From: Macrostomum lignano
Lineage: Eukaryota
Length of the DNA stretch: 64,000 nucleotides
Assembly (NCBI GenBank): GCA_002269645.1
Contig: NIVC01002097.1
Coordinates: 1-64,000, forward strand
Reading direction: 5' to 3'
In this document: in pieces, positions 15,976 to 64,000 of the stretch
Layout: the number at the start of each line of letters is the position of its first letter
Position numbering within the stretch: position 1 is the stretch's first letter
Translations under genes and position numbers: made by a program
The notes under the pieces: generated by a model
Told to the model about the DNA's origin: nothing
Databases searched by the model: none
The model's input: the letters and a program-made list of their open reading frames with translations, nothing else

Positions 15976-17616
15976 TCACCGCTGGCCGTCGCTGCAGGAC
16001 TCGTCACGCGAATGCTGACCCGCTCTGACTTCGGCTGGGATCGTCGCCGATGACACCGCCACAGCCGCCCCGGTCTCCACGGTTGCCGTGGACTGTCGCT
16101 GTCGCTGCGGGCTGGCGCCGGTCCTCAGCTCGCGCATCAGCAGCGCCTGCGTCTCCTGCACCCGCTCCGGCGTGGCCGGCCACAGACGGCGAAGTGGCGT
16201 CTGCGGCGGAGACGCGAGCGACAGCGCCGGGGATCGGCTCGGCCCGTAGCCGAACTCGCCGTAGCGACCGAAGCTGGCGGGCGAAGTCGGCGCCTGCATT
16301 GGCGAATGCGGCGGCTGTCGTCTTCGACCGCCGTTCATCTGGTTGCCGCTATTGCTGCCGCAGGCTCCGCCTCGGCCGCCGCGGCGCCGCCGGCAGCTAA
16401 GCAGGCTGATGAATGCGCGGCGGAAGTCGCGCATCGAGTGCGCGTAGATTGCCGGGTTCACCGAGCTGTTCACGTAGCCGAGCCACGTGACCACCGCGAA
16501 TATCTGCGCCTCGCTGGCGCCGAGGCCGCCGTCGCTGAGGGCGGAGATCACGTTGCAGACAAAGAAGGGCATCCAGCAGGCGATGAAGACGCCCATCACA
16601 ATGCCCAGGGTCTTGGCGGCGCGCTGCTCACGAGAGAACCTTAGCAACTTCTTGCGCACGCCGAAGCTGCTGCGGAGTCGGCGGGCGAAGCCCCGGGCGC
16701 CGCCTCCGGCGTTGTGCTCGTCATCGTCATCGCTGCCGGCCGTGATTTCGTCTATTGCCACGCCACCCCCGTCGCAGAAGCAGCTTTGATCGTCCTCCCG
16801 TCGACTACTAACGCCGACGGCACCCGCACCGGCCGCGCCGCAACTGGTTCCGCCGCGATGGATTCGAAGCACCACGGACGTTTGCAGGCCTCTGCCGCGC
16901 AGTACCTTGGCGCCGGATTGCCAGCCTCTGACGAGGTGCACCGCAGTGCGGTAGATCTTCCAGTACACGAACAGCATCACGAGCAGAGGCGCGTAGAAAG
17001 AGACGATGGAGGAGCAGATTAAGTAAGCTGGATCGCTCGTAAATTTACATCTCGCTGACGTCGGATGCGAGGCCGCCACCTTCATTGACGGCTCGGCGGC
17101 GTGCCACCAGGCGATGGCGGGGAAGCTGATGAGGCTGGCGCAGACCCAGACCACGCCGATCATCACCAAGCAGCGGCGCTTTGTCACCTTGGACGGGTAG
17201 CTCATGGGGTTCTCGATGGCCCAGTACCTCTCGATGGCGATCATGCACAGGTTGAGGATGCTTGCCGTCGAGCTCAGCACGTCGAACGCGTGCCACAGGT
17301 CGCACCAGGTGGCGCCAAACGGCCAGCGATCGTTGGTGACGTGACTCGCCACGGCGAACGGCATGACGACGGCGCCCATGAGCAGGTCGGCGGTGGCCAG
17401 CGACACGATGAAATAGTTGGTGATGGAGCGGAGATAGTGCTCCCGTAGCACGGCCACAATGACCAGCGAGTTGCCGAACACGGTGACGCAGACGAAGACG
17501 GACAGCAGGCAGCCGAGCGCCGCGTCCTGCACTCTGATGGTCGGGTTCGTGGCGTTGGCGAGGACTTCCGCAGCGCTGGAGTTCGCCATGGCCTTGCAGG
17601 GAAAATCGGAAAGCAT
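15976..17616 (-). CDS. Dop1R2: Intronless class A aminergic GPCR, invertebrate-type dopamine receptor (INDR/DOP2/Dop1R2-like), 546 aa (alternative start MANSS at 17589)
   Basis: 7 TM; TM1-2 AVLREHYLRSITNYFIVSLATAD, TM3 Asp (DVLSSTASILNLC..ERYWAI), TM4 ISFPAIAWW, TM5 serines SSIVS, TM6 AAKTLGIVMGVFIACWMPFF, TM7 NPAIY..RDFRRAF; motifs match the Dop1R2 family as I recall it. Confidence 0.85.
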   Translation of the reverse strand: MLSDFPCKAMANSSAAEVLANATNPTIRVQDAALGCLLSVFVCVTVFGNSLVIVAVLREHYLRSITNYFIVSLATADLLMGAVVMPFAVASHVTNDRWPFGATWCDLWHAFDVLSSTASILNLCMIAIERYWAIENPMSYPSKVTKRRCLVMIGVVWVCASLISFPAIAWWHAAEPSMKVAASHPTSARCKFTSDPAYLICSSIVSFYAPLLVMLFVYWKIYRTAVHLVRGWQSGAKVLRGRGLQTSVVLRIHRGGTSCGAAGAGAVGVSSRREDDQSCFCDGGGVAIDEITAGSDDDDEHNAGGGARGFARRLRSSFGVRKKLLRFSREQRAAKTLGIVMGVFIACWMPFFVCNVISALSDGGLGASEAQIFAVVTWLGYVNSSVNPAIYAHSMRDFRRAFISLLSCRRRRGGRGGACGSNSGNQMNGGRRRQPPHSPMQAPTSPASFGRYGEFGYGPSRSPALSLASPPQTPLRRLWPATPERVQETQALLMRELRTGASPQRQRQSTATVETGAAVAVSSATIPAEVRAGQHSRDESCSDGQR

Positions 17617-28050: not shown

Positions 28051-28069
28051 CATTTTCCTTGCCTGGCTG

Positions 28070-42173: not shown

Positions 42174-42244
42174 CAGACACTTATAGATCGAAGTGTCACG
42201 ACAGTGTCAGATGAGTACCAGCAGGCAGTGTCAGGTGTGCAAGG

Positions 42245-48496: not shown

Positions 48497-49138
48497 TTAT
48501 ATCAGGGGCATAGGGAGGGGGGATAGGGGGGATGCATCCCCCCAAAGAGCCTGACCAAAACTTTTTGTTGCCCTTTGTTGCTATACATGCTACCATGTGA
48601 ATACAGGACAGTTCAGTAACAGACAATTCGGTAACAGACAGTTCGGTAACAGCAAGGACAGTTCGGTAACATATTCAAGACAGTTCGGTAACATTTTCCA
48701 GGACAGTTCCGTAACGCCAGAAGACGACCATGTATGTACTGCCAAGTTTTTATAATGATGCATTTTATTTATTAGTGCATAAATTTTTTACAATAATTAT
48801 GATAGACGTGTAATATATTTTAAGAGACATAAACACTGTTATAATTCATGCAACCATAACAATGCGGAGTTAGTTTATTTCGGAAGTTGGTAACTTTTGT
48901 TTGGATTTTTGTGATACACGCATATAAGATACTGTAGCTACACTAAAATACAAGTATCGCTTGTAAAATATGTATAATAATTGTTTTTTTAAGAACTAAG
49001 TATTGAAGCAAATACGACTCATACATGTACATAAAAGTTACAGCTCGTTCAAATACAAACAATTACACTGTAGCACAATGTAAAAAATGTAAATATTCAT
49101 GCATTGTTCAGTTACGCAACGCTCACGAAAGCAATTGG

Positions 49139-50871
49139 TCACTTGGCGACTACATACTTGGCCACAGCACTTAGCAATTGAGCTGCCGTTTTGGTGCCTG
49201 CCTGGTACTCGGACCAATAACGCATCAGCTTGGCCTCCTTGGTGCGCTGGGCAAGCCTCTGGTAGCGGCTAAGCTGCTCCTGAGACACCAGCTTAGCGTG
49301 AAGAGTGGCTACCCTCGCTTCATCGTAAAGGAGCGAGGCAAGCTTGTAGAAGCCCAGGTTGCCACTCCGTGCCCTTTGGTTGAGGCGATGATGGTAGCCT
49401 TCAGGCCCATTGTTCGTTCTGATGTTCCTGCGGAAGATGCTGATCTCGTCCAGCTGCCAGACTGTGCTGTTGAGCCATGTGTTAGCAACGTAATCGCACA
49501 GCTCTTGCAGCTGTTGGTTCTGGATCGTCTGCTGCAGCTCAGTGAATGCAGCATGCATACAATTGCCTGGCAGAAACGGCAGTGCCATCAATTTGTGGCA
49601 GAAGGCCCGTACAGTCTCGTCGTTCGCGTAGGCTGGCTGCAGGCCCATTGACTGGATGTGTCGCCAAATTGCCTGGGAATAGTGAAAACTGCACCCATGC
49701 AGTTTCACACCTGCCAGAAAGACAGACTTAGCAGCTCTCCACATTCCAGCTTCGTAATCGAGCACGATGCTTGTCAGTCGGCACTCGGAAGCATATCCTT
49801 GAGAGCCCGCAGCGTACGTCGGTAGTCTCGCTTGCTCTTTCCGGACATCAGAATGTAGACCAGCGGTATCTGTTTGACTGACTCATTCTTGCGCACATTG
49901 CCGTGGAAGATGTAGAGCTGTAGAAAGGGCTCCTTCACGACGAAGAAGGTTCCGTCGCCGAACCACTCCTTGCAACGTCCCAGCAGCTGCAGTTGACGTT
50001 GGCTTGCGAAAATGAAGTGGCGCCTGCCATTCTCTTCGATGTAGACATCTCTTTGAAGGAAGTCATCCGGCAGTGCTTCTTCTTGAACTTGAAATTCCAG
50101 ATCTCTTGGTTCCTGTGGGCGTTGTGCTGCTCGTGCTCGATTTGCAGCTTTTGCCAGCTGGTCCACTGTTGGCAACTGAGGCAGACCTCTTAAGCTGCCT
50201 TCATTCTGCAGCAGAAGTTGTTCGGCGATTTCAGCGGCGGGCCTGAAGAGCTCCTGCCGAGCTTGATCGCAGGCTTCCCGAACAATCAGTCGCCGTATCG
50301 ATGGTTGCCCGACTTGGCGACATGTGTGCTCGTTCTTGCCGCTGATAAATGCGCCACTTGACTCGATAGCTGAAGCTGTGCATTTGGTGTGTGCGTTTCG
50401 GATTGTGCATCTCCAGTACGTTCTGTCTCCTCGGCTGAATTGTCGACTGTAGCTGAAGCCGTCAGAGCGGATCAAAATGTCCTTCTCCTTCTCAGATGCA
50501 CGTGGGATTAGGGTAAAGACGATAGGCTCGACCTGTTGTGGTATGTGCTGTGGTGGAGCATCCTCTTCCATAGAGCTCTCCATCGGCTCGTCTTGGTGCT
50601 GGTGGTGGTGCTGTTGATGCTGTTGCTGCTGCTGTGGATGCTGAGGCTGCTGCTGGTGCTGTTGATGCTGGTGCTGGTGCTGTTGATGCTGATGCTGCTG
50701 TTGGCATGCTTCACATGACCAATTAAAGTCTGTTCCTTGAAACTCTCGGTATTGCTGCAGGGAGATTCCAGTGTTACACAAACGATGATGCCATCGATTG
50801 CAAACGTCACACTGCAGAGCTTGCTGCCTGGCTCTTACAGCTGACTGACAGCGTATGCAATTATCGTCCAT
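49139..50871 (-). CDS. MULE transposase with N-terminal PHD finger, poly-Q/H linker, FLYWCH zinc finger and DDE core; split by one frameshift near 49775
   Basis: PHD CIRC..CDVC..H..C..CEAC; FLYWCH FSY..YWRC..C..H; WFGDGTF, LDYE, GCSFHY, RTNNGPEGYH. The alternative frame across the junction reads LTSIVLDYEAGMW. Confidence 0.9.
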
Positions 50872-51661: not shown

Positions 51662-53334
51662 ATATGCGCAACTTCGCTACTTCCTAGACTAGAGCTACAT
51701 TGGTCATTCATTAGCCCATTAAATTTTTGCTAATATTTACGTAAGCTACACGCTATACAATGCCATAGGTATAGCTAGGCTAGGGCAGGCAGGCTTTTAG
51801 TAGCTAAGCTAGAATGAAATTTGAATTATAGTTTACCTAGCATAGCCTAGCATGGGGGCCTATACATCTAGACTATTCTCAATTTTTAATTTATTAATAG
51901 GCCTGCCAGCAAATTAAGCGTTAACCTAATTGTAGAGATTGCCATCATGCAGAGCCTGCATTGCCAGCATGCTGTTAGCAGCATTTTGCTGCGTTGTTTT
52001 GTGCTTGGAAGTAGCAAAATATTGTGACACGGCTGCCAGCCAGCAGCTGCAGCGTGCGCATGGCATTGGTGAGTTCAAAAACTTTGTTAGTTGCATTCAA
52101 TATAACAAATTTAACCATGCGAATAATACCTGTTAATGTGTAAATCGATAGTATCTAATTGACTTACTGTAATACAGTATATCTATGCTACTTACTCTCA
52201 GTAAGCTTGTTACCGATTTGTCCACAACTTGTTACCGAACTGTTCTTGGTGTTACCGAACTGTCTGTTACCAAACTGTCTGTTACCGAATTGTCCTGTCC
52301 CCTACCATGTGACTGTCATAGCACTTTTACCTTGGTGTATCCCCCCCCTAGGAAATTCCTGGGTACGCTCCTGATTTATATTATATTATAGCTCACTATG
52401 CACAGTATGCAGACTATATTTAGGCCTAGGCCTTGATCGGCTCTTGATTATTTATCACAACGTGCTACGGTTTTCAAATGCTAAATTGATTGATCTGCGT
52501 CCAAGGCTGCGCCACACGCTTACAGTGTGGAGACTAGACTAGAAAAAGACTAGAACTTACATGTTTAATGAGTCGCATTTGTTGGAAACAGAAACCAATT
52601 TAAAAAAACCCGGCCTATTTACTAGCTAACCCTAGAAAAAGTTGGGTCTCCCTAAAACACGCCCCGCACCGCCCCGACCGCTACACATTATAACATTTTT
52701 TGTCAATGCAGTATTTGATTGCAGAGAAAAGTAATATTTGTTGTAAGAGTAATGGAATAAATAAATTAAACTATAATTCTAAATAACAGCATTATTTTTT
52801 ATTTTCTCGTTTCTATTATAAAATTGATGGGTTTCGACCTTTCAGGCCCCTTGTGAGGAAGCCTTCGGGCCTCAGGCCTCAGAAATAAATCAATTAGAGT
52901 CCTGGCCCCCACTCCTGTCAGATGGTCAGCCCCATGGTAGCTTGATCGTTTGGCGAGCAGTCTAGGTCCTATAGCTAAGAGAGAGACAGCGAGAGACAAG
53001 CAGGGAGAATTTTGAAGGTAGAAATTAGCTAATCCGCAGACTAAGCTAACTCGCTGCCACCAGCCCGTGCGTCCTGGCTCACCACACCGGGACTCTCGAA
53101 ATCGGGCTTCCGACTAGAAGGGGCTTTGCACTTACCTGCCAACTAGTGTCTTTTTGCTGTCAACCTCGAAGTCATAGCCGATGATAAGGGACACTGCTGG
53201 GACTAGATCGCATTGGCCATGCAGGTACAGAGGGGACTTGTGCAGGGGATTCTTGCAGTGGCGAGACTATGGGGTAGCTGCATGTACTATTACATTGCTA
53301 AATACGAAGGTATGTACTTTTGGCCTTCAACGCG

Positions 53335-53601
53335 AGTAGTAGGCAAAACGACGAGTCTAGCCGGTCAGCACTTTTTAAACAACCGTTTTAAGGGTCTAGA
53401 GGGGGGACACGAGGGGAAATTAAAAAAACACATCTAAACACCCTCCAACACAAAAACACATCTAAACACCCCCTAATAACAAAAATCAATAAAAATCATC
53501 CCCAACACTTCTTATCATCCCCCTCGTGTCCCCCTCTTAAGACCTTACAAACGGCCATTATAAATAGGGTCTGATCTGTACTCGTCGTTTTGCCTACTAC
53601 T
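53335..53601. repeat. Terminal foldback: perfect 22-bp inverted repeat with AGTAGT ends plus imperfect inner arms
   Basis: AGTAGTAGGCAAAACGACGAGT (53335-53356) / ACTCGTCGTTTTGCCTACTACT (53580-53601); inner GAGGGGGGACACGAGGGG / CCCCTCGTGTCCCCCTC. Confidence 0.85.
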
Positions 53602-53660
53602 ACATTCTATAACCCCTCGCACGCGCCGCAGGCGCGAAGGGTCTTTTTCTGTTACTAAAA

Positions 53661-53975
53661 ATGACCCGAGTTTACACCTTTTCTGTTAGTGATACTTTTG
53701 AGACTGTTGCTAAAAATGCAGAGATAATAAAACAACATATTTTGAATGGAATAATTGATGAAGTTTATTTAAAATATGACGACAAGCACGACCTAAAACT
53801 TTATCCATTAGAGTTAGATGAGATGTATAATTTAGAACAAGAGGGTGAGTTAATATTTCAACTTGGAGATTATTTAAATTCGGATGATTGGGAGGTTAGA
53901 TCAACAGATTCCGAAACAACAAATAGCTCATATGAAACTAGTGATTCTGAGAATGAAATTGAAATTTTTATGTAA
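53661..53975 (+). CDS. Polinton hypothetical acidic protein (104 aa)
   Basis: TAAAAATG start context shared with other element genes. Confidence 0.65.
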   Translation: MTRVYTFSVSDTFETVAKNAEIIKQHILNGIIDEVYLKYDDKHDLKLYPLELDEMYNLEQEGELIFQLGDYLNSDDWEVRSTDSETTNSSYETSDSENEIEIFM

Positions 53976-53990
53976 AAAAATATTTAAAAA

Positions 53991-54215
53991 ATGAATTTTT
54001 ATTCTATAACAGAAACGACGTTTATTATGAAAAATATATATAAAAAAATGAAGGTAAACTACTCCTATATCGGAAATGTACCGATTAATGAACTTAATGA
54101 AAATTTAAGTCTTGTTACAGTTGAACAAATGTCAATAATAATATTAGTAACAATAATAGTAATAATATTGTTTTTGTTTGTTATAAAAAATTTACTACCC
54201 TGTTGCCTTAAGTAA
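53991..54215 (+). CDS. Polinton small single-pass membrane protein (74 aa)
   Basis: Hydrophobic IIILVTIIVIILFLFVI followed by KNLLPCCLK; AAAAATG context. Confidence 0.6.
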   Translation: MNFYSITETTFIMKNIYKKMKVNYSYIGNVPINELNENLSLVTVEQMSIIILVTIIVIILFLFVIKNLLPCCLK

Positions 54216-54225
54216 TTGTTCGAAC

Positions 54226-55377
54226 TTAGTTCGCAGATATTATCTGGTTCTCATAAAAAGAACCCAATATTTCTTCCCCATCCTTATCAGCAATTATATA
54301 GGTTGTAGGAGTTGTATTTAAAACTTTACTGATAGTAAATTTCTCACTTATCTTCCAATATCCTTTTCTTCCCTTTTCAAACTTATCTTTCCATTTATAG
54401 ATATAAACAGAATCACCAACCTTAAAACCTTTAGTTTTCTTTTTTTCAAATTCTCCAAAAGTAACTTTAACTTTTTCAGGATTGTTATAAGCTTGTTGAG
54501 GAGTCATCTTTATAGCCGAATGATATGAATTGTTATAATCTTTCACGACGTCTGGTAATATTTTTACCCACTTTTGATTTCCATTAAGACTAAACTGAAA
54601 CCACAATTTCCTACCTAAAGTTCGATTAAATCTTTCTATTAATGCGTTTTTACTTTCGCCATAAATAGAATAAATTTTATTAATATACTCCCCATTCGCG
54701 TCCTTTTTCCTTTCTTGTCCTTTTTCAAAATGATACAATTTATATATATGAGGATTGTAAAATTCTTTTCCTTCATCAACACACAACCTTTCACTTTTTT
54801 CTCCAAGACTTCTAAAAGCACCAGCAACCTCCTCTCCTTTTTTGGATTTTAAAGGAACTGCCCACGCATATCGAGTAAAACCATCTAATATGGTTAAGAT
54901 ATATTTATATCCTTTATCGATTGGCATTGACATTAAATCAGCATACCAAATTTCATTCTTTTTAAAGTTCATGATTTTTCTATAAAATTTCGGTTTTCGG
55001 TATTCTTTGTGAAGAATCTTTGCCTCATCAGAACTTAACCCACCACCACTTAATAGCAAACACTCAACACAATTATTTCCATGTTGATTGTAATTAATTC
55101 CCAAACCAAATTTAACTTTAGACTGCAAAATCTTTTTAACCATCCACCTAGTTAATCTTTGGCTTACCGATAATCCTTGCAAATTATCTAATCCTTGAAT
55201 CATTTTTCTATCGGCTTCATGTTTTAATCTTAATGCTTCCTCAGGAGAATTCTTATCAGCATCTCTGTATGCTAAGTCATGATAATATGCTAACCAATCA
55301 ATACCGTTAATGGGAATTGAATCAGCTTTTGGAGTGTCATCAGGATTTAACCGGAGATCGAGTCGAGTCAACCCGGC
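54226..55377 (-). CDS. PLA2-like (parvovirus VP1-type) domain fused to a retroviral-like (rve) integrase; 3' exon after the group I intron
   Basis: PINGIDWLAYYHDLAY (PLA2 HD motif), SKVKFGLG; integrase IWYADL / LTILDGFTRY / CVDEGKEF / IERFNRTL. Confidence 0.9.
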   Translation of the reverse strand, partial: AGLTRLDLRLNPDDTPKADSIPINGIDWLAYYHDLAYRDADKNSPEEALRLKHEADRKMIQGLDNLQGLSVSQRLTRWMVKKILQSKVKFGLGINYNQHGNNCVECLLLSGGGLSSDEAKILHKEYRKPKFYRKIMNFKKNEIWYADLMSMPIDKGYKYILTILDGFTRYAWAVPLKSKKGEEVAGAFRSLGEKSERLCVDEGKEFYNPHIYKLYHFEKGQERKKDANGEYINKIYSIYGESKNALIERFNRTLGRKLWFQFSLNGNQKWVKILPDVVKDYNNSYHSAIKMTPQQAYNNPEKVKVTFGEFEKKKTKGFKVGDSVYIYKWKDKFEKGRKGYWKISEKFTISKVLNTTPTTYIIADKDGEEILGSFYENQIISAN

Positions 55378-55702
55378 CTTTATACCTTTGTTTTCACAAA
55401 GGAGTAGACTGTGTCTTAAGCTATCATAAGGATTGACTAAGTCCTTCAAGCCCACCAGCGTACAGTCGTTGCATCTCAACCATACTCAAGTCATACGAGG
55501 TTAGGTTTTCGATTCACTCTTGCCCATATATTTATCTTCAAGCTTGTTACCGTTGGGAAGAGGAGTTACCTCTGTTCCTTTGTAATCTTTCGAAAACAAA
55601 GTGGTACTTGAAGCTTTAGGGGATTGAGTGAGCGGCTGGTGTTGCCACTAATAGTGACTAGCAGTAGCTTTGCATCTACCACTCGGGCACAGCTCGAGCT
55701 CC
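55378..55702 (-). ncRNA. Group I self-splicing intron (325 nt, IC1-like with P5abc)
   Basis: Manual fold: P1 CGGGU/GCCCG with U.G at the 5' splice site; P2 with GCAA loop; P3 CACCAGC/GCUGGUG; P4 UCACUC/GAGUGA; P5a CUUCAAG/CUUGAAG; P7 A(C)GACUGU/ACAGUCU; J8/7 UAAGAC; P9 CCUUUGU-GAAA-ACAAAGG; terminal G. Removal restores the frame. The exact 3' splice site is less certain. Confidence 0.85.
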
Positions 55703-55831
55703 ACCCGTGAAATTATGCGATGGAATGTGTAACTCACCTGTATACCTTCCAGTAGTAAAGATTGGTGGTAAGCTTGTTAATCCTTTTTGAACATCTAATA
55801 ATCCTCCTTCAAACACTAATTGATTGCTCAT
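55703..55831 (-). CDS. 5' exon of the PLA2-integrase gene (MSNQ...GELHIPSHNFTG)
   Basis: TAAAATG context at 55831; GELHIPSHNFTG matches the PLA2 N-terminal Ca-loop motif (GELHLPGxNxxGPG type); in frame with the 3' exon after splicing. Confidence 0.8.
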
Positions 55832-56380
55832 TTTAATAGCCTTAAAAATACAAGTTAACACTAATTGTTTTGCAAATTCTTCGATAGTTGGTTGTTTAAC
55901 TTTTTTATAGCGATTATCTACGCTAGTTAGGTATCTTTTATTTGTCCAATGTTCAGACTTTTTCATCTGATCGGCATCTTTGTAACTAAATGAAGAAGCG
56001 GGGATTAAATGATCAATATGTAACATTCCAGTATAATCTTTTGATACATAATAATTTCTTGTGAAATTTAACCAATCAAAAAATAATTCTTTTGTGCAAC
56101 CAAGATATGAGATATAGTCCTTGTCCTTAAAATTTTTCAACGCCCAATTTATTCTATTTCTAATTAGAGTAATATTTTTGTAATTTTCATCGGTGTGATA
56201 TTTATTTTTTCTATATTCTTTCCATTTATCTTTATTGTTTTTCATCCACATTGTAGCCGAAGCAGTATGACACAAGCGACAATCATTTCTAAATTTTTTT
56301 GAATCGTTTCTCCAATAAAAAAATTCTTTAGTTATAGGCTTTTCTTGTTTACACTTAGCACAAATCTTTGTTTCATCCAT
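55832..56380 (-). CDS. HNH (His-Me finger) endonuclease with N-terminal zinc ribbon, in frame with the PLA2 5' exon
   Basis: CAKC...CRLC; YLGCTKELF; LHIDHLIPASSF...HWTN...DN, a giant-virus-type HNH pattern; no stop before MSNQ. Confidence 0.8.
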
Positions 56381-56396
56381 TTTATAAAAAATAAAT

Positions 56397-57068
56397 TTAA
56401 TTAATTCCTGTATGTCCAGCAGCTTTCGCGGCAGCTAAAACAAGTTTTCTAGGAGTTTTAAAACCTTCTCCAACAGCCGCTTTGTTATTTATAGAATTAA
56501 CAATCCTTTTATACAAGCTGGTATTTTTAACACCTCCACCTCCTAACTCATCGTAAAAAAATTTAGCACTTACTAATTCATCCCTAGTATATAAATCGGG
56601 GTTAAATTTTACCCTAGGGTTCGTAATAATATTAAATGCTCCACCCAATTCTCTATATAGTTCATTCCGATTTTTATCAACTCCACCAATTCGATAATTA
56701 TTATTACCTAAATCTGTCGCAGCAATACTAGCTGGTACTCTTGGAAATTGTTGCCGATCAACTCTTTCTTCAACCCTAATCTCTGCAACTCTCAATTGTG
56801 CTTGATTAACACCATAAGTAGGCGGATCATCCAAAATTTCATCCTCTTTTGGCTCCGTATTCTTAGCAATTTTTTCCAGAATGTCTTTATCTGTTTTTTC
56901 TAGTTCACTAATTTTCCCAGTAATAGGATTAACAAAAGGAGCAGCAAATCTATCACCAGCTAATTCTATTCCTAACTTTCTTTTTTGCAAATTTCTAACA
57001 AAATCGGAATATCTTTGCTTCTCTTTATAAATCGCTAACTCTCCATCAACGTCCATAAATTGACTCAT
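56397..57068 (-). CDS. Polinton hypothetical protein (223 aa)
   Basis: Full ORF with AAAAAATG context, divergent from the MCP gene; no assignable motif. Confidence 0.7.
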   Translation of the reverse strand: MSQFMDVDGELAIYKEKQRYSDFVRNLQKRKLGIELAGDRFAAPFVNPITGKISELEKTDKDILEKIAKNTEPKEDEILDDPPTYGVNQAQLRVAEIRVEERVDRQQFPRVPASIAATDLGNNNYRIGGVDKNRNELYRELGGAFNIITNPRVKFNPDLYTRDELVSAKFFYDELGGGGVKNTSLYKRIVNSINNKAAVGEGFKTPRKLVLAAAKAAGHTGIN

Positions 57069-57102
57069 TTTTTAATATAAAAAACTTTTTTAACTTAAAA
57101 AA

Positions 57103-58575
57103 ATGGCTGAAACAAAAACTATTTGGAGTGATAAATTTCATTTCAAAAAGCACCGTCAGTATATTAATGAGGTCAGGGCAAGAGATTTAAATTATACCCT
57201 ACCAACAAGTGATAATACAAATAACTTTACTAGCGGAACGGTAACTTTTGACATCGGCGCAACCAACACCATATTAGATATGAAAAATGCATTCTTCCGC
57301 GTTAGATGGTTGTATACTAGAAATGATGGAACTGCTCTTGCAGCCGGCGATATCGCAGATCGTTCTGGAATAATAATAGAAAATGATTGGTTTTATAAAT
57401 GTTTTTCTCAAGCTCAACTAACTGTTAATGGAGCCGAGGTTGAGACATCATCAAACCCCGCAGAGATTAATGGAGTTTTGAAACATTTAAATTATACTTA
57501 TTTATCAAAACAAGTTGGTGATAATGTTGGGTGGATGGCTGATAAGGGTAATGGACAAGCAGTAGTTTTCCCTAATGTACAAAACGCAGCTGGTGCAGAT
57601 ACTGCAGCTCTTATAGCTTATCTTAATACCAATATAGTTCCAGTTGTAACCACTATGACTAACACAAAAGATATTAACACCGGGTTTATAGATCGTCAGA
57701 ATAAATTCCCAGTAGCGGTTTTAACCACAGCAAACGCATATGAGCAAGACTTTTCAATCTTTCCACTATTTGGGTTCTTCTCACCAAATCGGGTATGGAA
57801 AGGATTAAAATTTGGGGTACAGTTGCAAATATCTGGTGGATATCAGCCTAGGATACTATATGGAACCTCGATTTCAACCGATATAGCAGTTCGCATAGCA
57901 TCAATACAATTAGTCGTGCCAACTATTGAGGTAACAGCCCCACTTTTAAAACACATCGATAATCAGTTAACGCATGATCAGGAAATATTTTATTTGAATC
58001 GTCGACATTTTATGCGAACCATTAATAACAATCAGGACCCATTCCAGTGGCAAATACTGACATCAAAACGTCGGGTGAGATATATTTTTGTTTGGTTTAA
58101 GATAACAAACAGAAGGAGTAAAAGAGCAAATGGGGATTTATATTGGCTTCAATCAGGAGATGTAGCAGCACAAGCAGCCACAGCAACAGACAATGAGGTT
58201 GCAGCTATTAACGAGTTTAATGTTCAGAATATCCGCCTGCAGGTTGATGACCAATACTATCCGGTTAAAGATCCTCTTAATCTAAATATAGCAAATAATA
58301 ATGTTAATGATTTTCTAAAATATTATCAAGATTATGTCAAAAATGAAGCGTATGCCATCCCTCAGTACATACCCACAGAGTTTCTAAACATTCATCCAGT
58401 GGTTGTTTATGATCTAACGGCACAGAAAGAAAACGTAGCCAATATTGGACTTAATTATATGTTAGAGATTAATAAAACCGGTAATCAGGCAATAGACGCA
58501 CACGTATTGTTTCTAGAGGAATATATGTCAATTGCTAAAGCTGATGGCACGATTGTTCGGGACGCGCCATTGTAA
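57103..58575 (+). CDS. Major capsid protein (double jelly-roll, Polinton PY-type), 490 aa
   Basis: Size and beta-rich blocks: FSQAQLTVNGAEVE, IFPLFGFF, RYIFVWF, NIRLQVDDQYYP, HPVVVYDLTAQ; adjacent to the ATPase and penton. Confidence 0.88.
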   Translation: MAETKTIWSDKFHFKKHRQYINEVRARDLNYTLPTSDNTNNFTSGTVTFDIGATNTILDMKNAFFRVRWLYTRNDGTALAAGDIADRSGIIIENDWFYKCFSQAQLTVNGAEVETSSNPAEINGVLKHLNYTYLSKQVGDNVGWMADKGNGQAVVFPNVQNAAGADTAALIAYLNTNIVPVVTTMTNTKDINTGFIDRQNKFPVAVLTTANAYEQDFSIFPLFGFFSPNRVWKGLKFGVQLQISGGYQPRILYGTSISTDIAVRIASIQLVVPTIEVTAPLLKHIDNQLTHDQEIFYLNRRHFMRTINNNQDPFQWQILTSKRRVRYIFVWFKITNRRSKRANGDLYWLQSGDVAAQAATATDNEVAAINEFNVQNIRLQVDDQYYPVKDPLNLNIANNNVNDFLKYYQDYVKNEAYAIPQYIPTEFLNIHPVVVYDLTAQKENVANIGLNYMLEINKTGNQAIDAHVLFLEEYMSIAKADGTIVRDAPL

Positions 58576-58576
58576 A

Positions 58577-58669
58577 ATTTTATCTATAAGTTTTATCTTT
58601 AAATTTTATCTTTAAGTTTTATCTTTAAGTTTTATCTTAAGTTTTATCTTTAAAATTTTATCTTTAAAA
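58577..58669 (+). promoter_or_regulatory. Intergenic array of ~7 TTTTATC-core repeats upstream of the ATPase; putative viral promoter
   Basis: (A/G)TTTTATCTTTAA-type units in tandem; a single TTTTATC also lies before the penton ATG (~59436). Confidence 0.45.
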
Positions 58670-59434
58670 ATGGTAAAAGCAAAACACAATATTATATTTC
58701 CAAATGATCCTTTTCTTTGTTTAGTAATTGGTGGGTCGGGTAAAGGAAAAACACACTTTGTTTATGACCTGTTTACAACTGATGGAATGCTAGACTATAA
58801 TAATTTATTAATTTACACTAACAAACCTAGAATAAAATATTATGAATTTCTTAAACATGGATTAAAAAACAAATTAAAAAAAGATGTGTTGTTTAGAATG
58901 TTAAGAGCATATGAGCAATATGAGGATGATGATGAACCACGATTTACACTCGATGACATTGAGGATTTATGTAAAACAACGGCACAAATATCAGAAAACA
59001 CCACCGAGAGATCCCCAACTGTTAGAGTATCAACCCGATTAGCCTATGATCAAATTCCAAAAAACGATAAAACACTAATTATTTTTGACGATTGTATTAA
59101 CGATGGCGATCAAGAATTGCAAAAGGAAATTTTTGTTAGTGGTAGAGGTGATGGAATTGGAGCTTTTTATCTAACACAGTCCTTTAGAGAATTAGAATCG
59201 ATTATAAAAAAGAATGCTAGTTGTTGTGTAATGTTTGATTTAGATAACTATGATTTACAAAATATACACGCTAGATTTAATCCTGGGTTGGATACAAAAC
59301 CATTTAAAAGTATGTGTAAAAAAATTTGGGATGATAATCATTATAGACACATATATATCAACCCTAGGTTACCCAGAAAAGATCGAATCTTACCAAATTT
59401 GATAAAAGAAGATAATGAGGAAGAAGAGACTTAG
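58670..59434 (+). CDS. A32/FtsK-like genome-packaging ATPase
   Basis: Walker A GGSGKGKT, Walker B LIIFDD, GRGDGIGAFYLTQS arginine-finger/sensor region. Confidence 0.93.
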   Translation: MVKAKHNIIFPNDPFLCLVIGGSGKGKTHFVYDLFTTDGMLDYNNLLIYTNKPRIKYYEFLKHGLKNKLKKDVLFRMLRAYEQYEDDDEPRFTLDDIEDLCKTTAQISENTTERSPTVRVSTRLAYDQIPKNDKTLIIFDDCINDGDQELQKEIFVSGRGDGIGAFYLTQSFRELESIIKKNASCCVMFDLDNYDLQNIHARFNPGLDTKPFKSMCKKIWDDNHYRHIYINPRLPRKDRILPNLIKEDNEEEET

Positions 59435-59451
59435 TTTTATCCACTATAAAA

Positions 59452-60237
59452 ATGACTACAAATTTAAATACTATAAAACAATTGGTAGATCGAACTAATT
59501 CAAAATTTAGTACAACCTTACAGTTTATAATGACAACCAGCGAGCAACGGATTCAATTGCGCGATCCGTTACAACTTGATCAAAGCCTAAGTTATCAAAT
59601 AGGTTTGATATTATTTTCTGTTTTTAACATGCCTCAATTAATTAATGCAACAAATAATCAATTTAGATATTCTAAAGATTCAGGAGCCAATTGGACAACA
59701 TTTAGTGTTAGCCCGGGTGCGTATTCCTATACCGATTTGAATGCTTATATAGAAGGAGAATTAACAGCTAACGGCGATTGGGTAGCAGGTGCGATTGTTA
59801 TAGGTGTTGATTTACCATCTGGCAGATTCACACTATCATTACAATCCGGATATCAGGTTGATTTCACAATTGCAAATTCACTCCGAACCATACTAGGATT
59901 TAATTCCCGAATAGTTACCACATCAAGCACCGGCGATACAGTTGGAAATATTGAGGGTGGAGTCAATACAATTAATATAACAACCGACATATCAAACGGC
60001 GGTTATATAACAGACGATAACGGAGTTTTGGTTCAACGTGGAATTATTTATTCAATCCCATTTCTTGCTGTTCCAATTGGAGAGAAAATGATTGTTTCAC
60101 CCCAAACCCCAATATATTATCCTTTAAATCAATATAACGTTCAATCAATTTATATTAGGATTGTAGATGAAACCGATAGGTTAATAAGTTTTGGTGGGCA
60201 GTCAATAACAGTGATTTTACGTATAAAACAGGTTTAA
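59452..60237 (+). CDS. Minor capsid (penton) protein, 261 aa
   Basis: Polinton PX-like pattern: PLQLD..YQIGL, INATNNQFRY, SPGAYSYTDLN, SLRTILGF, IYYPL..IYIRIVDETDRLISFGGQ. Confidence 0.85.
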   Translation: MTTNLNTIKQLVDRTNSKFSTTLQFIMTTSEQRIQLRDPLQLDQSLSYQIGLILFSVFNMPQLINATNNQFRYSKDSGANWTTFSVSPGAYSYTDLNAYIEGELTANGDWVAGAIVIGVDLPSGRFTLSLQSGYQVDFTIANSLRTILGFNSRIVTTSSTGDTVGNIEGGVNTINITTDISNGGYITDDNGVLVQRGIIYSIPFLAVPIGEKMIVSPQTPIYYPLNQYNVQSIYIRIVDETDRLISFGGQSITVILRIKQV

Positions 60238-60280
60238 CCGAACCTTTGGTTCGAGGACTTCGTCCGTTTCCCATAGTAAA

Positions 60281-60485
60281 AATGGGTAACAACAATGTTT
60301 TCGTGCAAAGCACGCGAACCGAAGGTGCGATAAAAAAACAATCAAATAAAGTTCAAAATGCAAAGGATAATTATGAAATCGAATTAACAAAATTGAAACA
60401 ATTACAGGCAGAAAAAATCCGAAAGGAACTGTTAAAATCCAAACCTACGAAACTAACCAAAACCAAGAGTTTTTCAGGAACATAA
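60281..60485 (+). CDS. Small basic hypothetical protein (MGNNNV...)
   Basis: TAAAAATG at 60281; Lys-rich, coiled-coil-like. Confidence 0.55.
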
Positions 60486-60486
60486 A

Positions 60487-60926
60487 ATGACTATGACGTG
60501 GAGCGATTTTAAACAAAGATATGGAACAGACACAACAAGCAATATCGAATTAACAAATTGGGCGCGGCAATTAAAAATAAAACCATTCAGATGTGTTATG
60601 CGGGATGAGATAAAAGACTTACCAATATATGGATGTTACATTGTTAATATTGAAACTACAAAAGAAAATGGTGTTCATTGGTCAGCAGTTTATTCAAAAC
60701 CTAAACTTGTTTATTTTTTTGATTCATATGCACTTCCTCCGTTACAGGAAATAAAAGACAAATTTAATCATACTAAAAATCGTTTATGTGGAGATCACCA
60801 CAACAGTTTCAAACATTTGATAAAAGTTATTGCGGACAAGCGGCGTTGTATTTTTTATATAGAATTAACAACTCTAAGGAAAGACCCGAAGACTTTAAAT
60901 ATATCATACAAAGTATGCGAACCTAA
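60487..60926 (+). CDS. Adenain-like cysteine protease, frameshifted near 60795
   Basis: GVHWSAVY (His) and FFDSY (Asp) in the annotated frame; the catalytic half RSPQQFQTFDKSYCGQAALYFL...MRT* lies in a different frame ending at 60926. Confidence 0.85.
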
Positions 60927-60993
60927 GGTTCGATCGGACGGAGTCCGCGTGCCATAGGCACGATTTTAGATTCTATAAAATAGACAGTAAAAA

Positions 60994-63045
60994 ATGTTAT
61001 TTTCTGGAACACCCTCATGGAACGGAACATCAAGTACTGGTGGTGGTACAAGTGGTGGAATAAGTGTTACATTCGGAGATAATCGATATATTAATGAAGA
61101 TGAAGGTTATAAAAAAAGTGAAATTGATACTACGAGTAAACTAAATTTAAAAAGAAATGTTGCAGATTCCTATACCAAAACTCAAATAGATGATTCATTA
61201 AATTTAAAACGGAATGTTGCAGATTCCTATACCAAAACAGAGGTTGACACTGGGTTAAATTTAAAAAGAGATATAACTGATTCTTATTCTCGAACTCAAA
61301 TAGATGATTCATTAAATTTAAAACGCAATACTGCCGATTCTTATACCAAAACTGAAGTTGATAATTCATTAAATTTAAAAAGAGATATATCTGATTCCTA
61401 TACCAAAACCGAAGTTGATAATTCCCTAAATTTAAAAAGAGATATAGCTGATTCTTATACCAAAACCGAAGTTGATAATTCCCTAAATTTAAAAAGAGAT
61501 ATAGCTGATTCCTATACCAAAACCGAAGTTGATAATTCCCTAAATTTAAAAAGAGATATAGCTGATTCTTATACCAAAACGGAGGTTGATAATTTAGTTG
61601 GAGGTGGAGCCCCAAAACAAGATCGATTCCAAACGGTTGAAACCGGCCACATACCTACCATGGCAGATTGGAGTGGAAATGGTTTTGCAATAACCACAAG
61701 TAGTGAATTTAATACAACCGATTTTGCAAGTTGGAAAGCTTTTGATGGTGACGATTCAACAGATTGGGCAACAAGTAATACTCAAACCGATTATTGGATT
61801 CAAGTCCAATGTCCTTCCGCGATAATGTGTTATAAAATTGATTTACGTGGGAGACCGTCACCTTCAACCGAACACCCAGCATCGTGGCGATTTGAGGGCA
61901 GTAATGACAATACGAGTTGGGATGTTTTAATACCTGCGGATAGTTCTGTAGAAATAAATAACTCAACTCAAACAATTAATGTCACACAAAATTTTGATAA
62001 AACATATTCATATTTCAGATTGTTCTGTCTTACATCAACATCAGGTTCAACCAACCCAGGTCTGTCAACCTTTCAGATTTATAGACAGACGTTTACAATT
62101 CTTGATTTAAATTTAGGAGTAGTTAATCAATCAATTGATATGGGTGGTAATACAATTACTAATATCTCTACTATAAACAATAACAGTTCTGTTGTTACTA
62201 AAGGTTATGTTGATACGCGAGTAACCCAAACGGCAGATGGCCGAATGTCTTTTAACGATAAAATAAAATTGGATGGAATACCTGCAATCGATGCCGCTTT
62301 GTACGAACCCGTAATTTGCAATTGGACTGGATATCAAAACCCAACCACAGCCGGTGATATTTTTCCAACTGGAAGTTTTGTTGGAGATGCTTCTTATATT
62401 GATTATCAAAATGGAGCTAGAATTACTGATGAAGCATCTGGTCGGTCTGGAGCGTTACAATTTAATTTCACCCATTTTCGTAATATCTCCGCCTCCTTCT
62501 ATTTCCGAGTTGCGAATTCTACAGGAACAGGAGCTGATGCGGTTTGGTTTTATGCATATTGTCATGAACGACCAACAACCGAATTTGGATCCGGGTTAAC
62601 AACCAACGCCGGCTTGATAGTGTTTGCTAGTGAATGGCACGACCGAGTTGGAGTTCTTTGGAGCAATATAAAATCAGACGGTGCAACAGTTCGTAATGAT
62701 GTTCTTAATGACGCAGATCAAACTATAACCTATGCTAATATTGATAATGGTGATTGGCATCTTTTTGAAATTAATATTTTAAATCAAAGAATTTGGTATC
62801 AAATAAGCACATACAATGTTTCAGCTGAAACATATACGCTAATTGGGCAAAACTTTTTTACATATGATAGTGGCACTTGGGGAGAGTTAGATAAAACGGG
62901 AACTCTTATGGGTTTTGGTGCTCGAACCGGAGGGGCGGATGCTGCACATTTTATTCGTGGCGCTGCCGTTTGTGGTAGCACATCAGCCGGCTATGATTTT
63001 GCTGCGACCGCATATTTGGAACGGCCACAAACTCAGATAACCTAA
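60994..63045 (+). CDS. Fibre/spike-like protein: 19-aa tandem repeats, F5/8C discoidin domain, fibre motif, C-terminal L-type-lectin-like domain
   Basis: ~8-9 x SYTKTEVDNSLNLKRDIAD; WKAFDGDDSTDWAT..YWIQVQ..WRFEGSND (discoidin); IDMGGNTITNI..VVTKGYVD; GALQF..ADAVWF..WHLFEI..FGARTGG (ConA-like). Confidence 0.7.
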   Translation: MLFSGTPSWNGTSSTGGGTSGGISVTFGDNRYINEDEGYKKSEIDTTSKLNLKRNVADSYTKTQIDDSLNLKRNVADSYTKTEVDTGLNLKRDITDSYSRTQIDDSLNLKRNTADSYTKTEVDNSLNLKRDISDSYTKTEVDNSLNLKRDIADSYTKTEVDNSLNLKRDIADSYTKTEVDNSLNLKRDIADSYTKTEVDNLVGGGAPKQDRFQTVETGHIPTMADWSGNGFAITTSSEFNTTDFASWKAFDGDDSTDWATSNTQTDYWIQVQCPSAIMCYKIDLRGRPSPSTEHPASWRFEGSNDNTSWDVLIPADSSVEINNSTQTINVTQNFDKTYSYFRLFCLTSTSGSTNPGLSTFQIYRQTFTILDLNLGVVNQSIDMGGNTITNISTINNNSSVVTKGYVDTRVTQTADGRMSFNDKIKLDGIPAIDAALYEPVICNWTGYQNPTTAGDIFPTGSFVGDASYIDYQNGARITDEASGRSGALQFNFTHFRNISASFYFRVANSTGTGADAVWFYAYCHERPTTEFGSGLTTNAGLIVFASEWHDRVGVLWSNIKSDGATVRNDVLNDADQTITYANIDNGDWHLFEINILNQRIWYQISTYNVSAETYTLIGQNFFTYDSGTWGELDKTGTLMGFGARTGGADAAHFIRGAAVCGSTSAGYDFAATAYLERPQTQIT

Positions 63046-63125
63046 ATAACTTAAATAACTTAAATAACCTAAATCAGCTAATGCTGCGACCCTACGGGGC
63101 GATAACCTAAATATTTCTATATAAA

Positions 63126-63729
63126 ATGGCTTTTAGTAGAACTCCATCGATGAGACAAAATAACAATGTTATCATTCCTATTCCTAAACAAGAATCAAAT
63201 ATAAAAACTTTTAAATCTCATACCAAATATTTATTTAGCAATGTGAATGTTCAGGATAATAAGAAACTTCAAGAATTAATTAAATTATTAAAAAACCATA
63301 TTATCCTTCAAGAGTTTTGGAAAATTGGATTTAAATGGGAGAAAAAAGAAAGAATCACTCCGATACAATACCTATTGAGCTCGGGACAAATCCCCAAAGA
63401 GCCCTATTGCAGCCAAGGTCTGAACCGCGCCGGACGCCCCCCTTTCCCGCGCCAGACATCTACCCGTACCGCGCCAGGGCCAGTCCCCAGGATCAGTGAT
63501 TTGGTTCAATTTTCCCATGCCCCGCGCCACGCCACCGCGCGCCGCCGCCACACGACACGCCACCGCGCGCCGCCGCCACGCGCCGCGCCGCTGCCGCGCG
63601 CCGCGCCGCCGCCAGGCCAATCCGCGCCGGACGCCGTCCACGAAAATGGCCATTGGCTGCAATAGGGCCAAAGAGCGTGGGGAATTCATTTTAGTGCTAT
63701 TAAAAATAGACGAAAATGTCGGTATCTGA
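63126..63729 (+). pseudogene. Polinton ORF (109 aa when restored) interrupted by a MITE
   Basis: Removing 63402-63675 (element plus one TSD) gives 330 nt in frame: ...SSGQIPKE|RGEFILVLLKIDENVGI*. Confidence 0.8.
63402..63667. mobile_element. GC-rich MITE (266 bp), 15-bp TIRs, 8-bp TSD
   Basis: CCCTATTGCAGCCAA / TTGGCTGCAATAGGG; TSD CCAAAGAG at 63394-63401 and 63668-63675. Confidence 0.92.
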
Positions 63730-64000
63730 AGCAGATAAAAGGGAACGTGACCATTTTAATCAACGTAAGGGTCACATGTTAAGTAATGTTGATCGTATTA
63801 ACTATGATTATGATTTATATGCTAAAAAAGTAAGAAGGATTTCAAACCATATCAGAAATATGGATTTTTTCAATATTGGATTTGGAAGCTTATCAATGTT
63901 ATGTGTAATCGTTTTAGGTATTTTACAATCTGTTCCAACTCTTAATTTATCTCAATTATTTTTAGGTATTTCAATTGGTTCAATATCAGGATTTGAATTA
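63716..64000 (+). CDS. Partial membrane-protein ORF open to the window edge
   Basis: AAAATG at 63716; 95 codons without a stop; hydrophobic IGFGSLSMLCVIVLGILQSV and LFLGISIGSISG segments. Confidence 0.6.
   Translation, partial: MSVSEADKRERDHFNQRKGHMLSNVDRINYDYDLYAKKVRRISNHIRNMDFFNIGFGSLSMLCVIVLGILQSVPTLNLSQLFLGISIGSISGFEL

What the first reader, a model, noticed from the sequence alone, without database searches (positions are those of the whole stretch)
55378..55702. Group I self-splicing intron inside a Polinton gene in an animal nuclear genome
Seen (minus strand): the PLA2 motif is split between two ORFs (GELHIPSHNFTG / AGLTRLDLRLNPD...YYHDLAY) by 325 nt that fold into every core helix. 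P1: exon CGGGU with IGS GCCCG (55684-55688), U.G at the junction. P2: GCAA tetraloop (55664-55679). P3: 55635-55641 / 55453-55459. P4: 55626-55631 / 55514-55519. P5abc: P5a 55607-55613 / 55536-55542 with the A-rich bulge GGUAACAAG. P7: 55462-55469 / 55406-55412 with a bulged C beside the G-binding pair. P8 and J8/7 UAAGAC. P9: GAAA hairpin (55385-55402). Excision at 55703/55377 is in frame and gives a 426-aa PLA2-integrase. Established: group I introns occur in protist/fungal rDNA, organelles, bacteria, phages and some giant viruses; in animals I know them only from mitochondria of early-branching lineages. Inference: a ribozyme that gates integrase expression and entered the animal nucleus on a virus, apparently undescribed.
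Basis: partly seen in the sequence, partly recalled or inferred. Interest (0 to 1): 0.96.

Follow-up and report, generated by a model that had tools for sequence, protein, structure and literature searches.

The report
Group I intron in flatworm provirus
A 325-base stretch that splits an integrase gene of a virus-like element sitting in flatworm (Macrostomum) DNA has all the hallmarks of a self-splicing group I intron; such introns were recently reported in similar elements of protists, so the animal host is the new part.

Summary
On the minus strand, 55378-55702 matches Rfam's group I model end to end (33.5 bits, E 8e-07 for the 601 bases searched). That is below the curated 50-bit cut-off, and the hit is lost in whole-window scans. 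All 86 base pairs of a P1-P9 model with P5abc are standard pairs. They include the U.G at the 5' splice site, the P3/P7 pseudoknot, three GNRA loops and a terminal G. The stretch is non-coding and richer in G+C than the exons.

Searched separately, the two exons land on adjacent residues of 20 uninterrupted relatives, inside the most conserved part of a parvovirus-type PLA2 domain fused to an rve integrase.

Other relatives lose homology at exactly this codon boundary, which suggests a recurrent, possibly mobile, intron. A free-standing HNH nuclease gene lies next to it.

The host flank is Macrostomum lignano (96% identical receptor). The element carries capsid, ATPase and integrase genes, shows no polymerase, and runs off the window, so "Polinton" is not established.

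Group I introns in integrated polinton-like viruses of protists were published in 2025. This is a new member of that kind in an animal genome. Splicing itself is untested.

The parts
55378..55702 (-). Candidate group I intron, 325 nt, no internal ORF. P1-P9 with P2.1 and P5abc; GNRA loops in P2, P5b and P9; ends in G.
   Evidence: RF00028 33.5 bits, E 8e-07, full model; 86 of 86 standard pairs; z -2.5; stops in all frames, G+C 0.44.
55703..55831 (-). Exon 1 of the PLA2-integrase gene, 43 codons. Its ATG carries the element's start motif. The unspliced frame closes 8 codons into the intron (51 codons in all).
   Evidence: Aligns to N-termini of relatives up to ...NF[TA]G; start motif.
54226..55377 (-). 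Exon 2, 383 codons plus stop: the rest of the PLA2-like domain (HD..Y motif), the rve integrase core and a C-terminal part. No stops or frameshifts.
   Evidence: PF00665 5e-07; PF08398 profile positions 21-69 at 17.8 bits on the first 100 residues; foamy-virus integrase chains in PDB, E 2e-06; 125 relatives.
55676..56380 (-). HNH / endonuclease VII-like ORF, 234 codons as it stands. It has its own start motif and no stop of its own: it reads through exon 1 and ends at the stop inside the intron.
   Evidence: phrog_1035 endonuclease VII 2.3e-08, phrog_2255 HNH 5.8e-05; tblastn to 29 phage records annotated HNH endonuclease or endonuclease VII, 23-35% identity; no Pfam, NCBIfam or PDB hit.
57103..58575 (+). 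Major capsid protein gene (double jelly-roll type), 490 codons.
   Evidence: Only 2 relatives in 5.8 billion proteins. AlphaFold model of low confidence (pLDDT 46.5), yet Foldseek top hits are consistently major capsid proteins of giant viruses, virophages, adomaviruses and MELD viruses, plus one adintovirus entry annotated as a penton capsid protein (E to 7.5e-13, TM 0.40-0.45).
58670..59434 (+). A32-type DNA-packaging ATPase gene.
   Evidence: PF04665 1.4e-07; phrog_2666 terminase large subunit 2.2e-06.
60994..63045 (+). Fibre-like protein gene with a discoidin (F5/8 type C) domain and 57-nt internal repeats.
   Evidence: PF00754 7.4e-12; phage tail and fibre PHROGs to 2.9e-20; tandem repeat at 61142-61594.
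63126..63715 (+). Element ORF of unknown function, broken once by a small nested insertion that has terminal inverted repeats and a target-site duplication.
   Evidence: Sequence reading; no family hit.
53650..64000 (.). Visible part of the low-G+C virus-like element. The left edge is approximate, and the right end lies beyond the window. Further ORFs with the start motif: 53661-53975, 53991-54215, 56397-57068(-), 59452-60237, 60487-60957, and one from 63716 onward.
   Evidence: G+C step from about 0.5 to about 0.3 near 53.65-53.7 kb; start motif at ORF starts; no N in the window.
15976..17616 (-). Host gene: intronless aminergic (dopamine-receptor-like) GPCR. A second paralogue lies at 34975-36387(-).
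   Evidence: PF00001 2.9e-75 and 1.9e-60; 96% identity over 97% of its length to a Macrostomum lignano UniRef protein; lineage Metazoa, Platyhelminthes; only a partial match to human receptors in PDB.

Best explanation
The 325 nt at 55378-55702 (minus strand) are a bona fide group I intron. It has Tetrahymena-like peripheral helices (P2, P2.1, P5abc) and is carried by a young, largely intact polinton-like virus-type element integrated in the nuclear genome of the flatworm Macrostomum lignano or a very close relative. The intron sits in the most conserved stretch of a parvovirus-type PLA2 domain fused to the element's rve integrase. Inferred mechanism: RNA started at the element's own start motif folds into the ribozyme. 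A free guanosine bound in P7 attacks after U55703, which is held by the U.G pair of P1. The freed exon end then attacks after the terminal G, most likely 55378, giving an mRNA for a PLA2-integrase of about 426 residues. Unspliced RNA yields only a 51-residue peptide. Because splicing needs no spliceosome, such an intron is tolerated in an element whose genes may be transcribed outside the nucleus by a helper virus; this is an inference from the shared A-rich start motif. The neighbouring free-standing HNH nuclease gene, together with the presence or absence of an interruption at exactly this codon boundary among relatives, suggests the intron is or was mobile by homing. Shown here: the structure, the model match, the exon-junction conservation, the host flank and the element's gene content. 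Inferred: catalysis, the exact 3' site, expression in the worm, and homing.
For: RF00028 full-length match, E 8e-07. 86 of 86 standard pairs in P1-P9 plus P5abc, U.G at the 5' site, terminal G, P3/P7 pseudoknot, J8/7 and P7 matching the model consensus. Fold z-score -2.5. Non-coding and richer in G+C than the exons. Exon 1 and exon 2, searched apart, map to adjacent residues in 20 uninterrupted relatives, where the site is G 20/20, then P or A 20/20, and T 20/20 two residues later. PF08398 spans the site in relatives. Interruption at the same boundary in other lineages, from proteins only: P0003 and P0027 lack the N-terminus while P0249, in the same 90% cluster as P0003, reads through. Short proteins P0264 (43 aa) and P0267 (55 aa) follow exon 1 and then stop within 4-5 residues. 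HNH nuclease gene adjacent. Start motif at the exon-1 ATG and at nearly all element ORFs. Host identity. Capsid, ATPase and integrase genes. Precedent in protist PLVs, with introns of 309-376 bp in genes called as short proteins of about 50 aa (PMC12220804).
Against: The bit score (33.5) is below Rfam's gathering score (50), and the hit vanishes in whole-window scans. No covariation evidence, because I did not fetch relatives' DNA. Three in-frame 3' sites exist, and P10 pairing (2, 0 and 2 pairs) does not choose among them. No expression or splicing data. Only the left junction with host DNA is in the window, and no second copy or shared repeat ties the element to the flank. The interruptions in relatives are inferred from protein ends and could have other causes.
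Confidence: 0.8

Rival explanations
1. It is a group I intron by descent, but this copy is a silent fossil. The provirus is not transcribed in the worm, or the ribozyme no longer splices, so the intron has no activity in an animal nucleus.
For: No expression data. One element ORF is already broken by a nested insertion. The extra residue at the junction relative to 20 relatives could reflect drift. The score is below the Rfam threshold.
Against: All 86 pairs are intact and the core junctions are conserved. All other visible ORFs are open. The strong composition contrast with the host suggests recent arrival.
Confidence: 0.25
2. The element is not part of the flatworm genome. The contig is an assembly chimera, or the element belongs to a protist (food alga, commensal) or a free virus in the culture.
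For: Only one junction is visible. The element's composition is foreign (G+C 0.33 against about 0.5). Its relatives are all environmental and unnamed. No repeat is shared between element and flank. Comparable intron-bearing elements are known from protists (PMC12220804).
Against: There are no gaps in the window and the sequence is continuous from the flatworm genes to the element. The element carries a nested transposon-like insertion with a target duplication, so it has resided in a cellular genome. rve integrases do integrate such elements into animal genomes (PMC11296320).
Confidence: 0.12
3. The 325 nt are a spliceosomal intron or an unrelated insertion that merely disrupts the gene. The group I resemblance is chance.
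For: The score is below Rfam's cut-off. A GU lies at the exon-1 border and AG dinucleotides lie near the 3' end, and one GU...AG combination keeps the frame (my reading).
Against: A full-length model match with E 8e-07 and a complete, uninterrupted helix set with pseudoknot and GNRA loops is not expected by chance. The in-frame GU...AG option adds still more residues than relatives have. The element's other genes have no introns.
Confidence: 0.04

Closest known systems
Group I introns (RF00028) in polinton-like viruses integrated in protist genomes: Paulinella micropora, Desmodesmus armatus, Rhodomonas lacustris cluster C3 / Gossevirus-type (PMC12220804)
   Same: The same RNA family sits inside genes of integrated polinton-like elements. 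Intron size falls in their 309-376 bp range. Their introns lie in genes called as short proteins of about 50 aa near the capsid gene, as exon 1 plus read-in is here (51 codons). Their cluster also has rve integrases and a capsid module.
   Different: The host here is an animal. The interrupted gene is identified here as a PLA2-integrase. This intron scores below the gathering cut-off their scan used, so a scan of that kind would miss it. Whether their introns sit at the same site is not known, and I could not compare the DNA.
Collaborative homing: an ORF-less group I intron with a free-standing homing endonuclease gene next to it, as in cyanophage psbA and T-even phages (Zeng et al. 2009; Bonocora and Shub 2009, as cited in PMC11296320)
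   Same: The intron has no ORF of its own. An HNH-family nuclease gene lies immediately beside the interrupted gene. Relatives exist with and without an interruption at the site.
   Different: Cleavage of intron-less alleles is untested. Here the nuclease ORF has no stop of its own and runs through exon 1 into the intron. The setting is a eukaryotic virus-like element.
Tetrahymena-type nuclear rDNA group I introns (subgroup IC1; from my own knowledge, subgroup not tested here)
   Same: P2 and P2.1, a P5abc extension with an A-rich bulge and a GAAA loop on P5b, and a bulged nucleotide in P7.
   Different: It lies in a protein-coding gene of a virus-like element, not in rDNA. There are no P9.1/P9.2 extensions. 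Subgroup models were not available.
Mitochondrial introns of animals: group I introns in cnidarian and sponge mitochondria (PMC1618405); mitochondrial introns also in bryozoans (PMC9240083; abstract only read, intron type not checked)
   Same: A self-splicing intron class found in animal DNA.
   Different: Those are in organelle genomes and often carry their own endonuclease ORFs. This one is in nuclear DNA, brought in by an integrated element.
Parvovirus VP1-type phospholipase A2 domain (Pfam PF08398), also reported in polinton-like viruses and virophages (PMC11296320)
   Same: Relatives of the split gene match PF08398 above threshold. The window's exon 2 carries the HD..Y part of the domain.
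   Different: Here the domain is fused to an rve integrase and is split by the intron in its glycine-rich loop. In the window it is below the Pfam threshold because it is split.

Membership tests
Group I intron (Rfam RF00028) | Reaches the curated gathering score of the family model | tested here: not met
   33.5 bits against 50. The match is nevertheless full length, with E 8e-07 for the 601 bases searched.
Group I intron (Rfam RF00028) | Core helices P3-P8, with P3 and P7 forming a pseudoknot | tested here: met
   P3 7 bp, P4 6, P5 3, P6 4+4, P7 7 with one bulge, P8 4+5. All are standard pairs, and P3 and P7 cross.
Group I intron (Rfam RF00028) | P1 formed by the 5' exon end and an internal guide sequence, with U.G at the splice site | tested here: met
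   Exon 55707-55703 pairs with 55688-55684. The last exon base U pairs with G.
Group I intron (Rfam RF00028) | Terminal G at the 3' end and a defined 3' splice site (P10) | tested here: inconclusive
   The intron ends in G at 55378, but two further in-frame G sites (55372, 55369) exist. P10 has 2, 0 and 2 pairs. Relatives favour 55378, with one extra residue.
Group I intron (Rfam RF00028) | Conserved junction and P7 sequences of the catalytic core (J6/7, P7, J8/7) | tested here: met
   These segments align to the model consensus with high posterior probability (alignment).
Group I intron (Rfam RF00028) | Helices supported by compensatory changes among relatives | not tested
Group I intron (Rfam RF00028) | Guanosine-dependent self-splicing | not testable with these tools
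   No expression or biochemical data are available here.
Group I intron (Rfam RF00028) | Removal restores a conserved coding sequence | tested here: met
   The exons, searched apart, abut in 20 uninterrupted relatives, with a one-residue length difference.
Polinton / Maverick in the strict sense | [quoted passage not shown] | tested here: inconclusive
   None among the visible ORFs, but the element continues beyond the window.
Polinton / Maverick in the strict sense | Retrovirus-type (rve) integrase | tested here: met
   PF00665 5e-07, just under the Pfam cut-off in the window and above it in relatives; PDB foamy-virus integrase matches.
Polinton / Maverick in the strict sense | Capsid module: double-jelly-roll major capsid protein, penton protein, A32-type ATPase and adenovirus-type protease | tested here: inconclusive
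   Major capsid protein by fold from a low-confidence model and ATPase were found. Penton and protease were not recognised among the unassigned ORFs.
Polinton / Maverick in the strict sense | Terminal inverted repeats and a 6-bp target-site duplication | not testable with these tools
   The right end lies outside the window.
Collaborative homing pair (free-standing endonuclease plus ORF-less intron) | Nuclease gene adjacent to the interrupted gene, and an intron without an ORF | tested here: met
   HNH-like ORF at 55676-56380; the intron has stops in all frames.
Collaborative homing pair (free-standing endonuclease plus ORF-less intron) | The nuclease cuts intron-less alleles at the insertion site | not testable with these tools
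   No data.

The most novel reading that the evidence does not exclude
This is the first group I intron that is transcribed and self-splices in the nucleus (or in cytoplasmic virus factories) of an animal. It would belong to a still active polinton-like virus of flatworms, and it would spread among related elements by homing with help from the neighbouring HNH nuclease.
Probability: 0.2. Interest if true: 0.85.

Novelty: new member of a known kind. Interest (0 to 1): 0.6.

Why it matters
Group I introns are known in animals only from mitochondria. A structurally intact one in nuclear DNA of a bilaterian, carried in by an integrated virus-like element, extends their known distribution and shows a route by which such ribozymes reach animal genomes.

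It also suggests two points for the field. First, scans at Rfam's gathering score miss introns of this kind. Second, the "short ~50-aa proteins" reported next to introns in protist elements may be first exons of split genes such as this PLA2-integrase.

The shared start motif together with a spliceosome-independent intron hints that the element is expressed by a helper virus's machinery. That would imply a virophage-like lifestyle in an animal.

Tried and rejected
- The whole-window Rfam scan at gathering score found nothing.
- The whole-window permissive scan lost the intron to the speed filters. It returned only microRNA and snoRNA look-alikes on one 26-bp tandem array at 42.3-43.4 kb, which I take as artefacts.
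- The intron has no blastn match in the phage collection.
- The HNH-like ORF has no Pfam, NCBIfam or PDB match. Only PHROGs and tblastn to phages name it.
- The capsid ORF has no PDB, Pfam or PHROG match by sequence. Only the fold search identifies it.
- Exact look-ups of three host ORFs found nothing on record.
- The cluster listing gave no organism names for the integrase relatives.
- No inverted repeat could be taken as element termini, because the right end is missing.
- No copy of the element or of the two small blocks near its ends occurs in the flank.
- The nested-energy evaluation of the full model fails because of the pseudoknot. Without P7 the model is -76.6 kcal/mol, against an unconstrained optimum of -91.4.
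- A GU...AG spliceosomal reading was considered and rejected: it is either out of frame or adds more residues.
- I tried to source the GAAA-tetraloop receptor motif from a paper to test P6, but the paper prints no letters. I dropped this line and use no receptor claim.
- Literature searches found no paper linking Macrostomum to polinton-like elements or to group I introns.

Full report
**1. The observation**

On the minus strand, exon 1 ends ...AAU UUC ACG GGU at 55703 and exon 2 starts GCC GGG UUG at 55377. The ORF list shows a 234-codon ORF (55676-56380) that ends inside the intervening stretch. It also shows a 417-codon ORF (54226-55479) that begins inside it.

Rfam at gathering score finds nothing in the window. 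A permissive scan of 55250-55850 gives RF00028 (group I catalytic intron) at 55385-55675(-). The match covers model positions 1-253 of 253, at 33.5 bits against a 50-bit cut-off, with E 8e-07 for the bases searched. Scaled to 64 kb that is about 1e-4. The same hit is lost to the speed filters when the whole window is scanned permissively, so sequence similarity to the family is weak and the score rests largely on structure.

- All 86 pairs are standard pairs.
- There is a U.G at the 5' splice site and a G at the 3' end.
- P3 and P7 cross, as in the group I pseudoknot.
- P5b and P9 carry GAAA loops, the P2 loop contains GCAA, and J8/7 reads UAAGAC.

58 of the 86 pairs also appear in the unconstrained minimum-energy fold. 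The fold is better than all 100 shuffles (z -2.5). The stretch has 10, 3 and 7 stops in its three frames and G+C 0.44, against 0.36 and 0.32 in the exons.

**2. The split gene**

I neither built nor searched the joined product.

Exon 2 (383 codons) carries an rve integrase core and has 125 relatives. Many of them combine PF08398 (parvovirus-type PLA2-like domain) with PF00665. None carries an organism name.

Exon 1 and exon 2, compared separately with these relatives, land on adjacent residues in 20 uninterrupted proteins. The site is the most conserved stretch of the domain: G in 20 of 20, then P or A in 20 of 20, then T in 20 of 20 two residues later. PF08398 spans the site in relatives. In the window, exon 2 alone gives a partial, sub-threshold match to profile positions 21-69.

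One discrepancy remains. Three in-frame G-terminated 3' sites exist:
- 55378 gives one residue more than the family.
- 55372 gives one residue fewer.
- 55369 gives two residues fewer.

P10 pairing (2, 0 and 2 pairs) does not decide among them. Site 55378 keeps the A-G seen in one relative (P0044), so it is the best guess.

**3. Recurrence of the interruption (from proteins only)**

Several relatives lose N-terminal homology exactly at this boundary: P0003, P0027, P0009, P0023 and P0045. Within one 90%-identity cluster, P0249 reads through while P0003 does not.

A search with the window's own 51-codon ORF (exon 1 plus read-in) found two short proteins, P0264 (43 aa) and P0267 (55 aa). Both follow exon 1 up to ...NF[AT]G, then diverge and stop within 4-5 residues, as the window does.

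This pattern fits a recurrent, possibly mobile, intron at one conserved site. It is not proof.

**4. Neighbourhood**

The visible element has low G+C (about 0.33, against about 0.5 in the flank). It holds:
- the split PLA2-integrase gene;
- an HNH / endonuclease VII-like ORF directly upstream;
- a major capsid gene, identified only by fold from a low-confidence model but with consistent capsid matches;
- an A32-type ATPase gene;
- a discoidin-domain fibre-like gene;
- several unassigned ORFs.

No polymerase or protease is recognised. The element continues past position 64000, so its class and its ends cannot be settled.

Breaks in element genes: one ORF near the right end is interrupted once by a small nested insertion with inverted ends and a target duplication. 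The integrase gene has one intervening sequence (the intron) and no stops or frameshifts. The other visible ORFs are open.

Nearly every ORF start, including the exon-1 ATG at 55831 and the HNH ATG at 56380, is preceded by T and a run of A's ending in the ATG. There are 26 such sites in 10.4 kb, of which 10 open at least 70 codons. The 53.3 kb flank also has 26 sites, but only 1 opens at least 70 codons. The HNH ORF nevertheless has no stop of its own and runs through exon 1 into the intron. From memory, the motif resembles late-gene starts of poxviruses and some giant viruses. That is a lead and was not tested.

**5. Host**

The flank is dense in mini- and microsatellites. It carries two intronless aminergic GPCR genes. 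One is 96% identical over 97% of its length to a Macrostomum lignano protein, a free-living flatworm. The contig is not human, since the best human-derived chains match only partly.

There are no gaps in the window. Only the left junction is visible, and nothing in the flank repeats element sequence. Integration is therefore well supported but not proven.

**6. Mechanism**

The best-supported reading is an ordinary two-step group I splicing reaction that restores the glycine-rich loop of the PLA2-like domain and so the full PLA2-integrase. Unspliced RNA ends after 51 codons.

Independence from the spliceosome fits an element that may be transcribed by a helper virus. The adjacent HNH gene and the presence/absence pattern among relatives fit homing of the "collaborative" kind described for phages (as cited in PMC11296320). 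All of this paragraph is inference.

**7. Comparison and novelty**

RF00028 introns in polinton-like viruses integrated in protist genomes were reported in 2025. They are 309-376 bp long and lie in genes called as short proteins of about 50 aa. That scan used the gathering cut-off (PMC12220804). PLA2-like domains are known in such viruses and in virophages (PMC11296320).

In animals, group I introns are documented in mitochondria of cnidarians and sponges, and mitochondrial introns are also reported in bryozoans (abstracts only). I found no report for an animal nuclear genome or for Macrostomum.

The finding is therefore a new member of a known kind, with a notable new host range.

Noticed in passing
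window 53600-64000: Nearly all element ORFs start with T plus a run of 3 or more A's ending in the ATG. There are 26 such sites in 10.4 kb, 10 of them opening at least 70 codons, against 26 sites with 1 such ORF in the 53.3 kb flank. This is a candidate start or promoter signal. From memory it resembles late-gene starts of poxviruses and giant viruses.
   Followed up: partly
window 55676-56380 (-): The HNH-like ORF has no stop of its own. It is in frame with exon 1 and ends at the stop inside the intron, so its C-terminal 51 codons are exon 1 plus intron read-in. This may be chance or a coupling of nuclease production to unspliced RNA.
   Followed up: partly
window 63126-63715: One element ORF is interrupted once by a small nested insertion with inverted ends and a target-site duplication. 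This suggests the element has resided in a cellular genome with active DNA transposons. No other copy of the insertion is in the window.
   Followed up: partly
window 53335-53601: A palindromic block sits right at the left edge of the element: perfect 22-nt arms at 53335-53356 and 53580-53601, and inner 31-nt arms at 77%. It could be a small host transposon or part of the element's terminus. There is no other copy in the window.
   Followed up: partly
window 48603-48693 and 52208-52298: A 91-nt inverted repeat (86% identity) brackets about 3.7 kb that holds an ORF with PHD and FLYWCH zinc-finger domains (49774-50871, minus strand). It is probably a host DNA transposon.
   Followed up: no
window 42241-43364: A 26-bp tandem array (about 42 copies) produces sub-threshold Rfam hits to microRNA and snoRNA families. 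These are taken as artefacts of the repeat.
   Followed up: partly
window 15976-17616 (-) and 34975-36387 (-): Two intronless dopamine-receptor-like GPCR genes lie about 19 kb apart in a flank unusually rich in mini- and microsatellite arrays, for example 9943-11535, 19906-21822 and 28069-28990.
   Followed up: no
window 58578-58667 and 61142-61594: A 13-nt tandem repeat (about 7 copies) lies directly upstream of the ATPase gene. A 57-nt in-frame repeat (about 8 copies) lies inside the fibre-like gene.
   Followed up: no
relatives P0001-P0052: A sizeable, unnamed environmental family fuses a parvovirus-type PLA2-like domain to an rve integrase. The fusion itself may be worth describing.
   Followed up: partly
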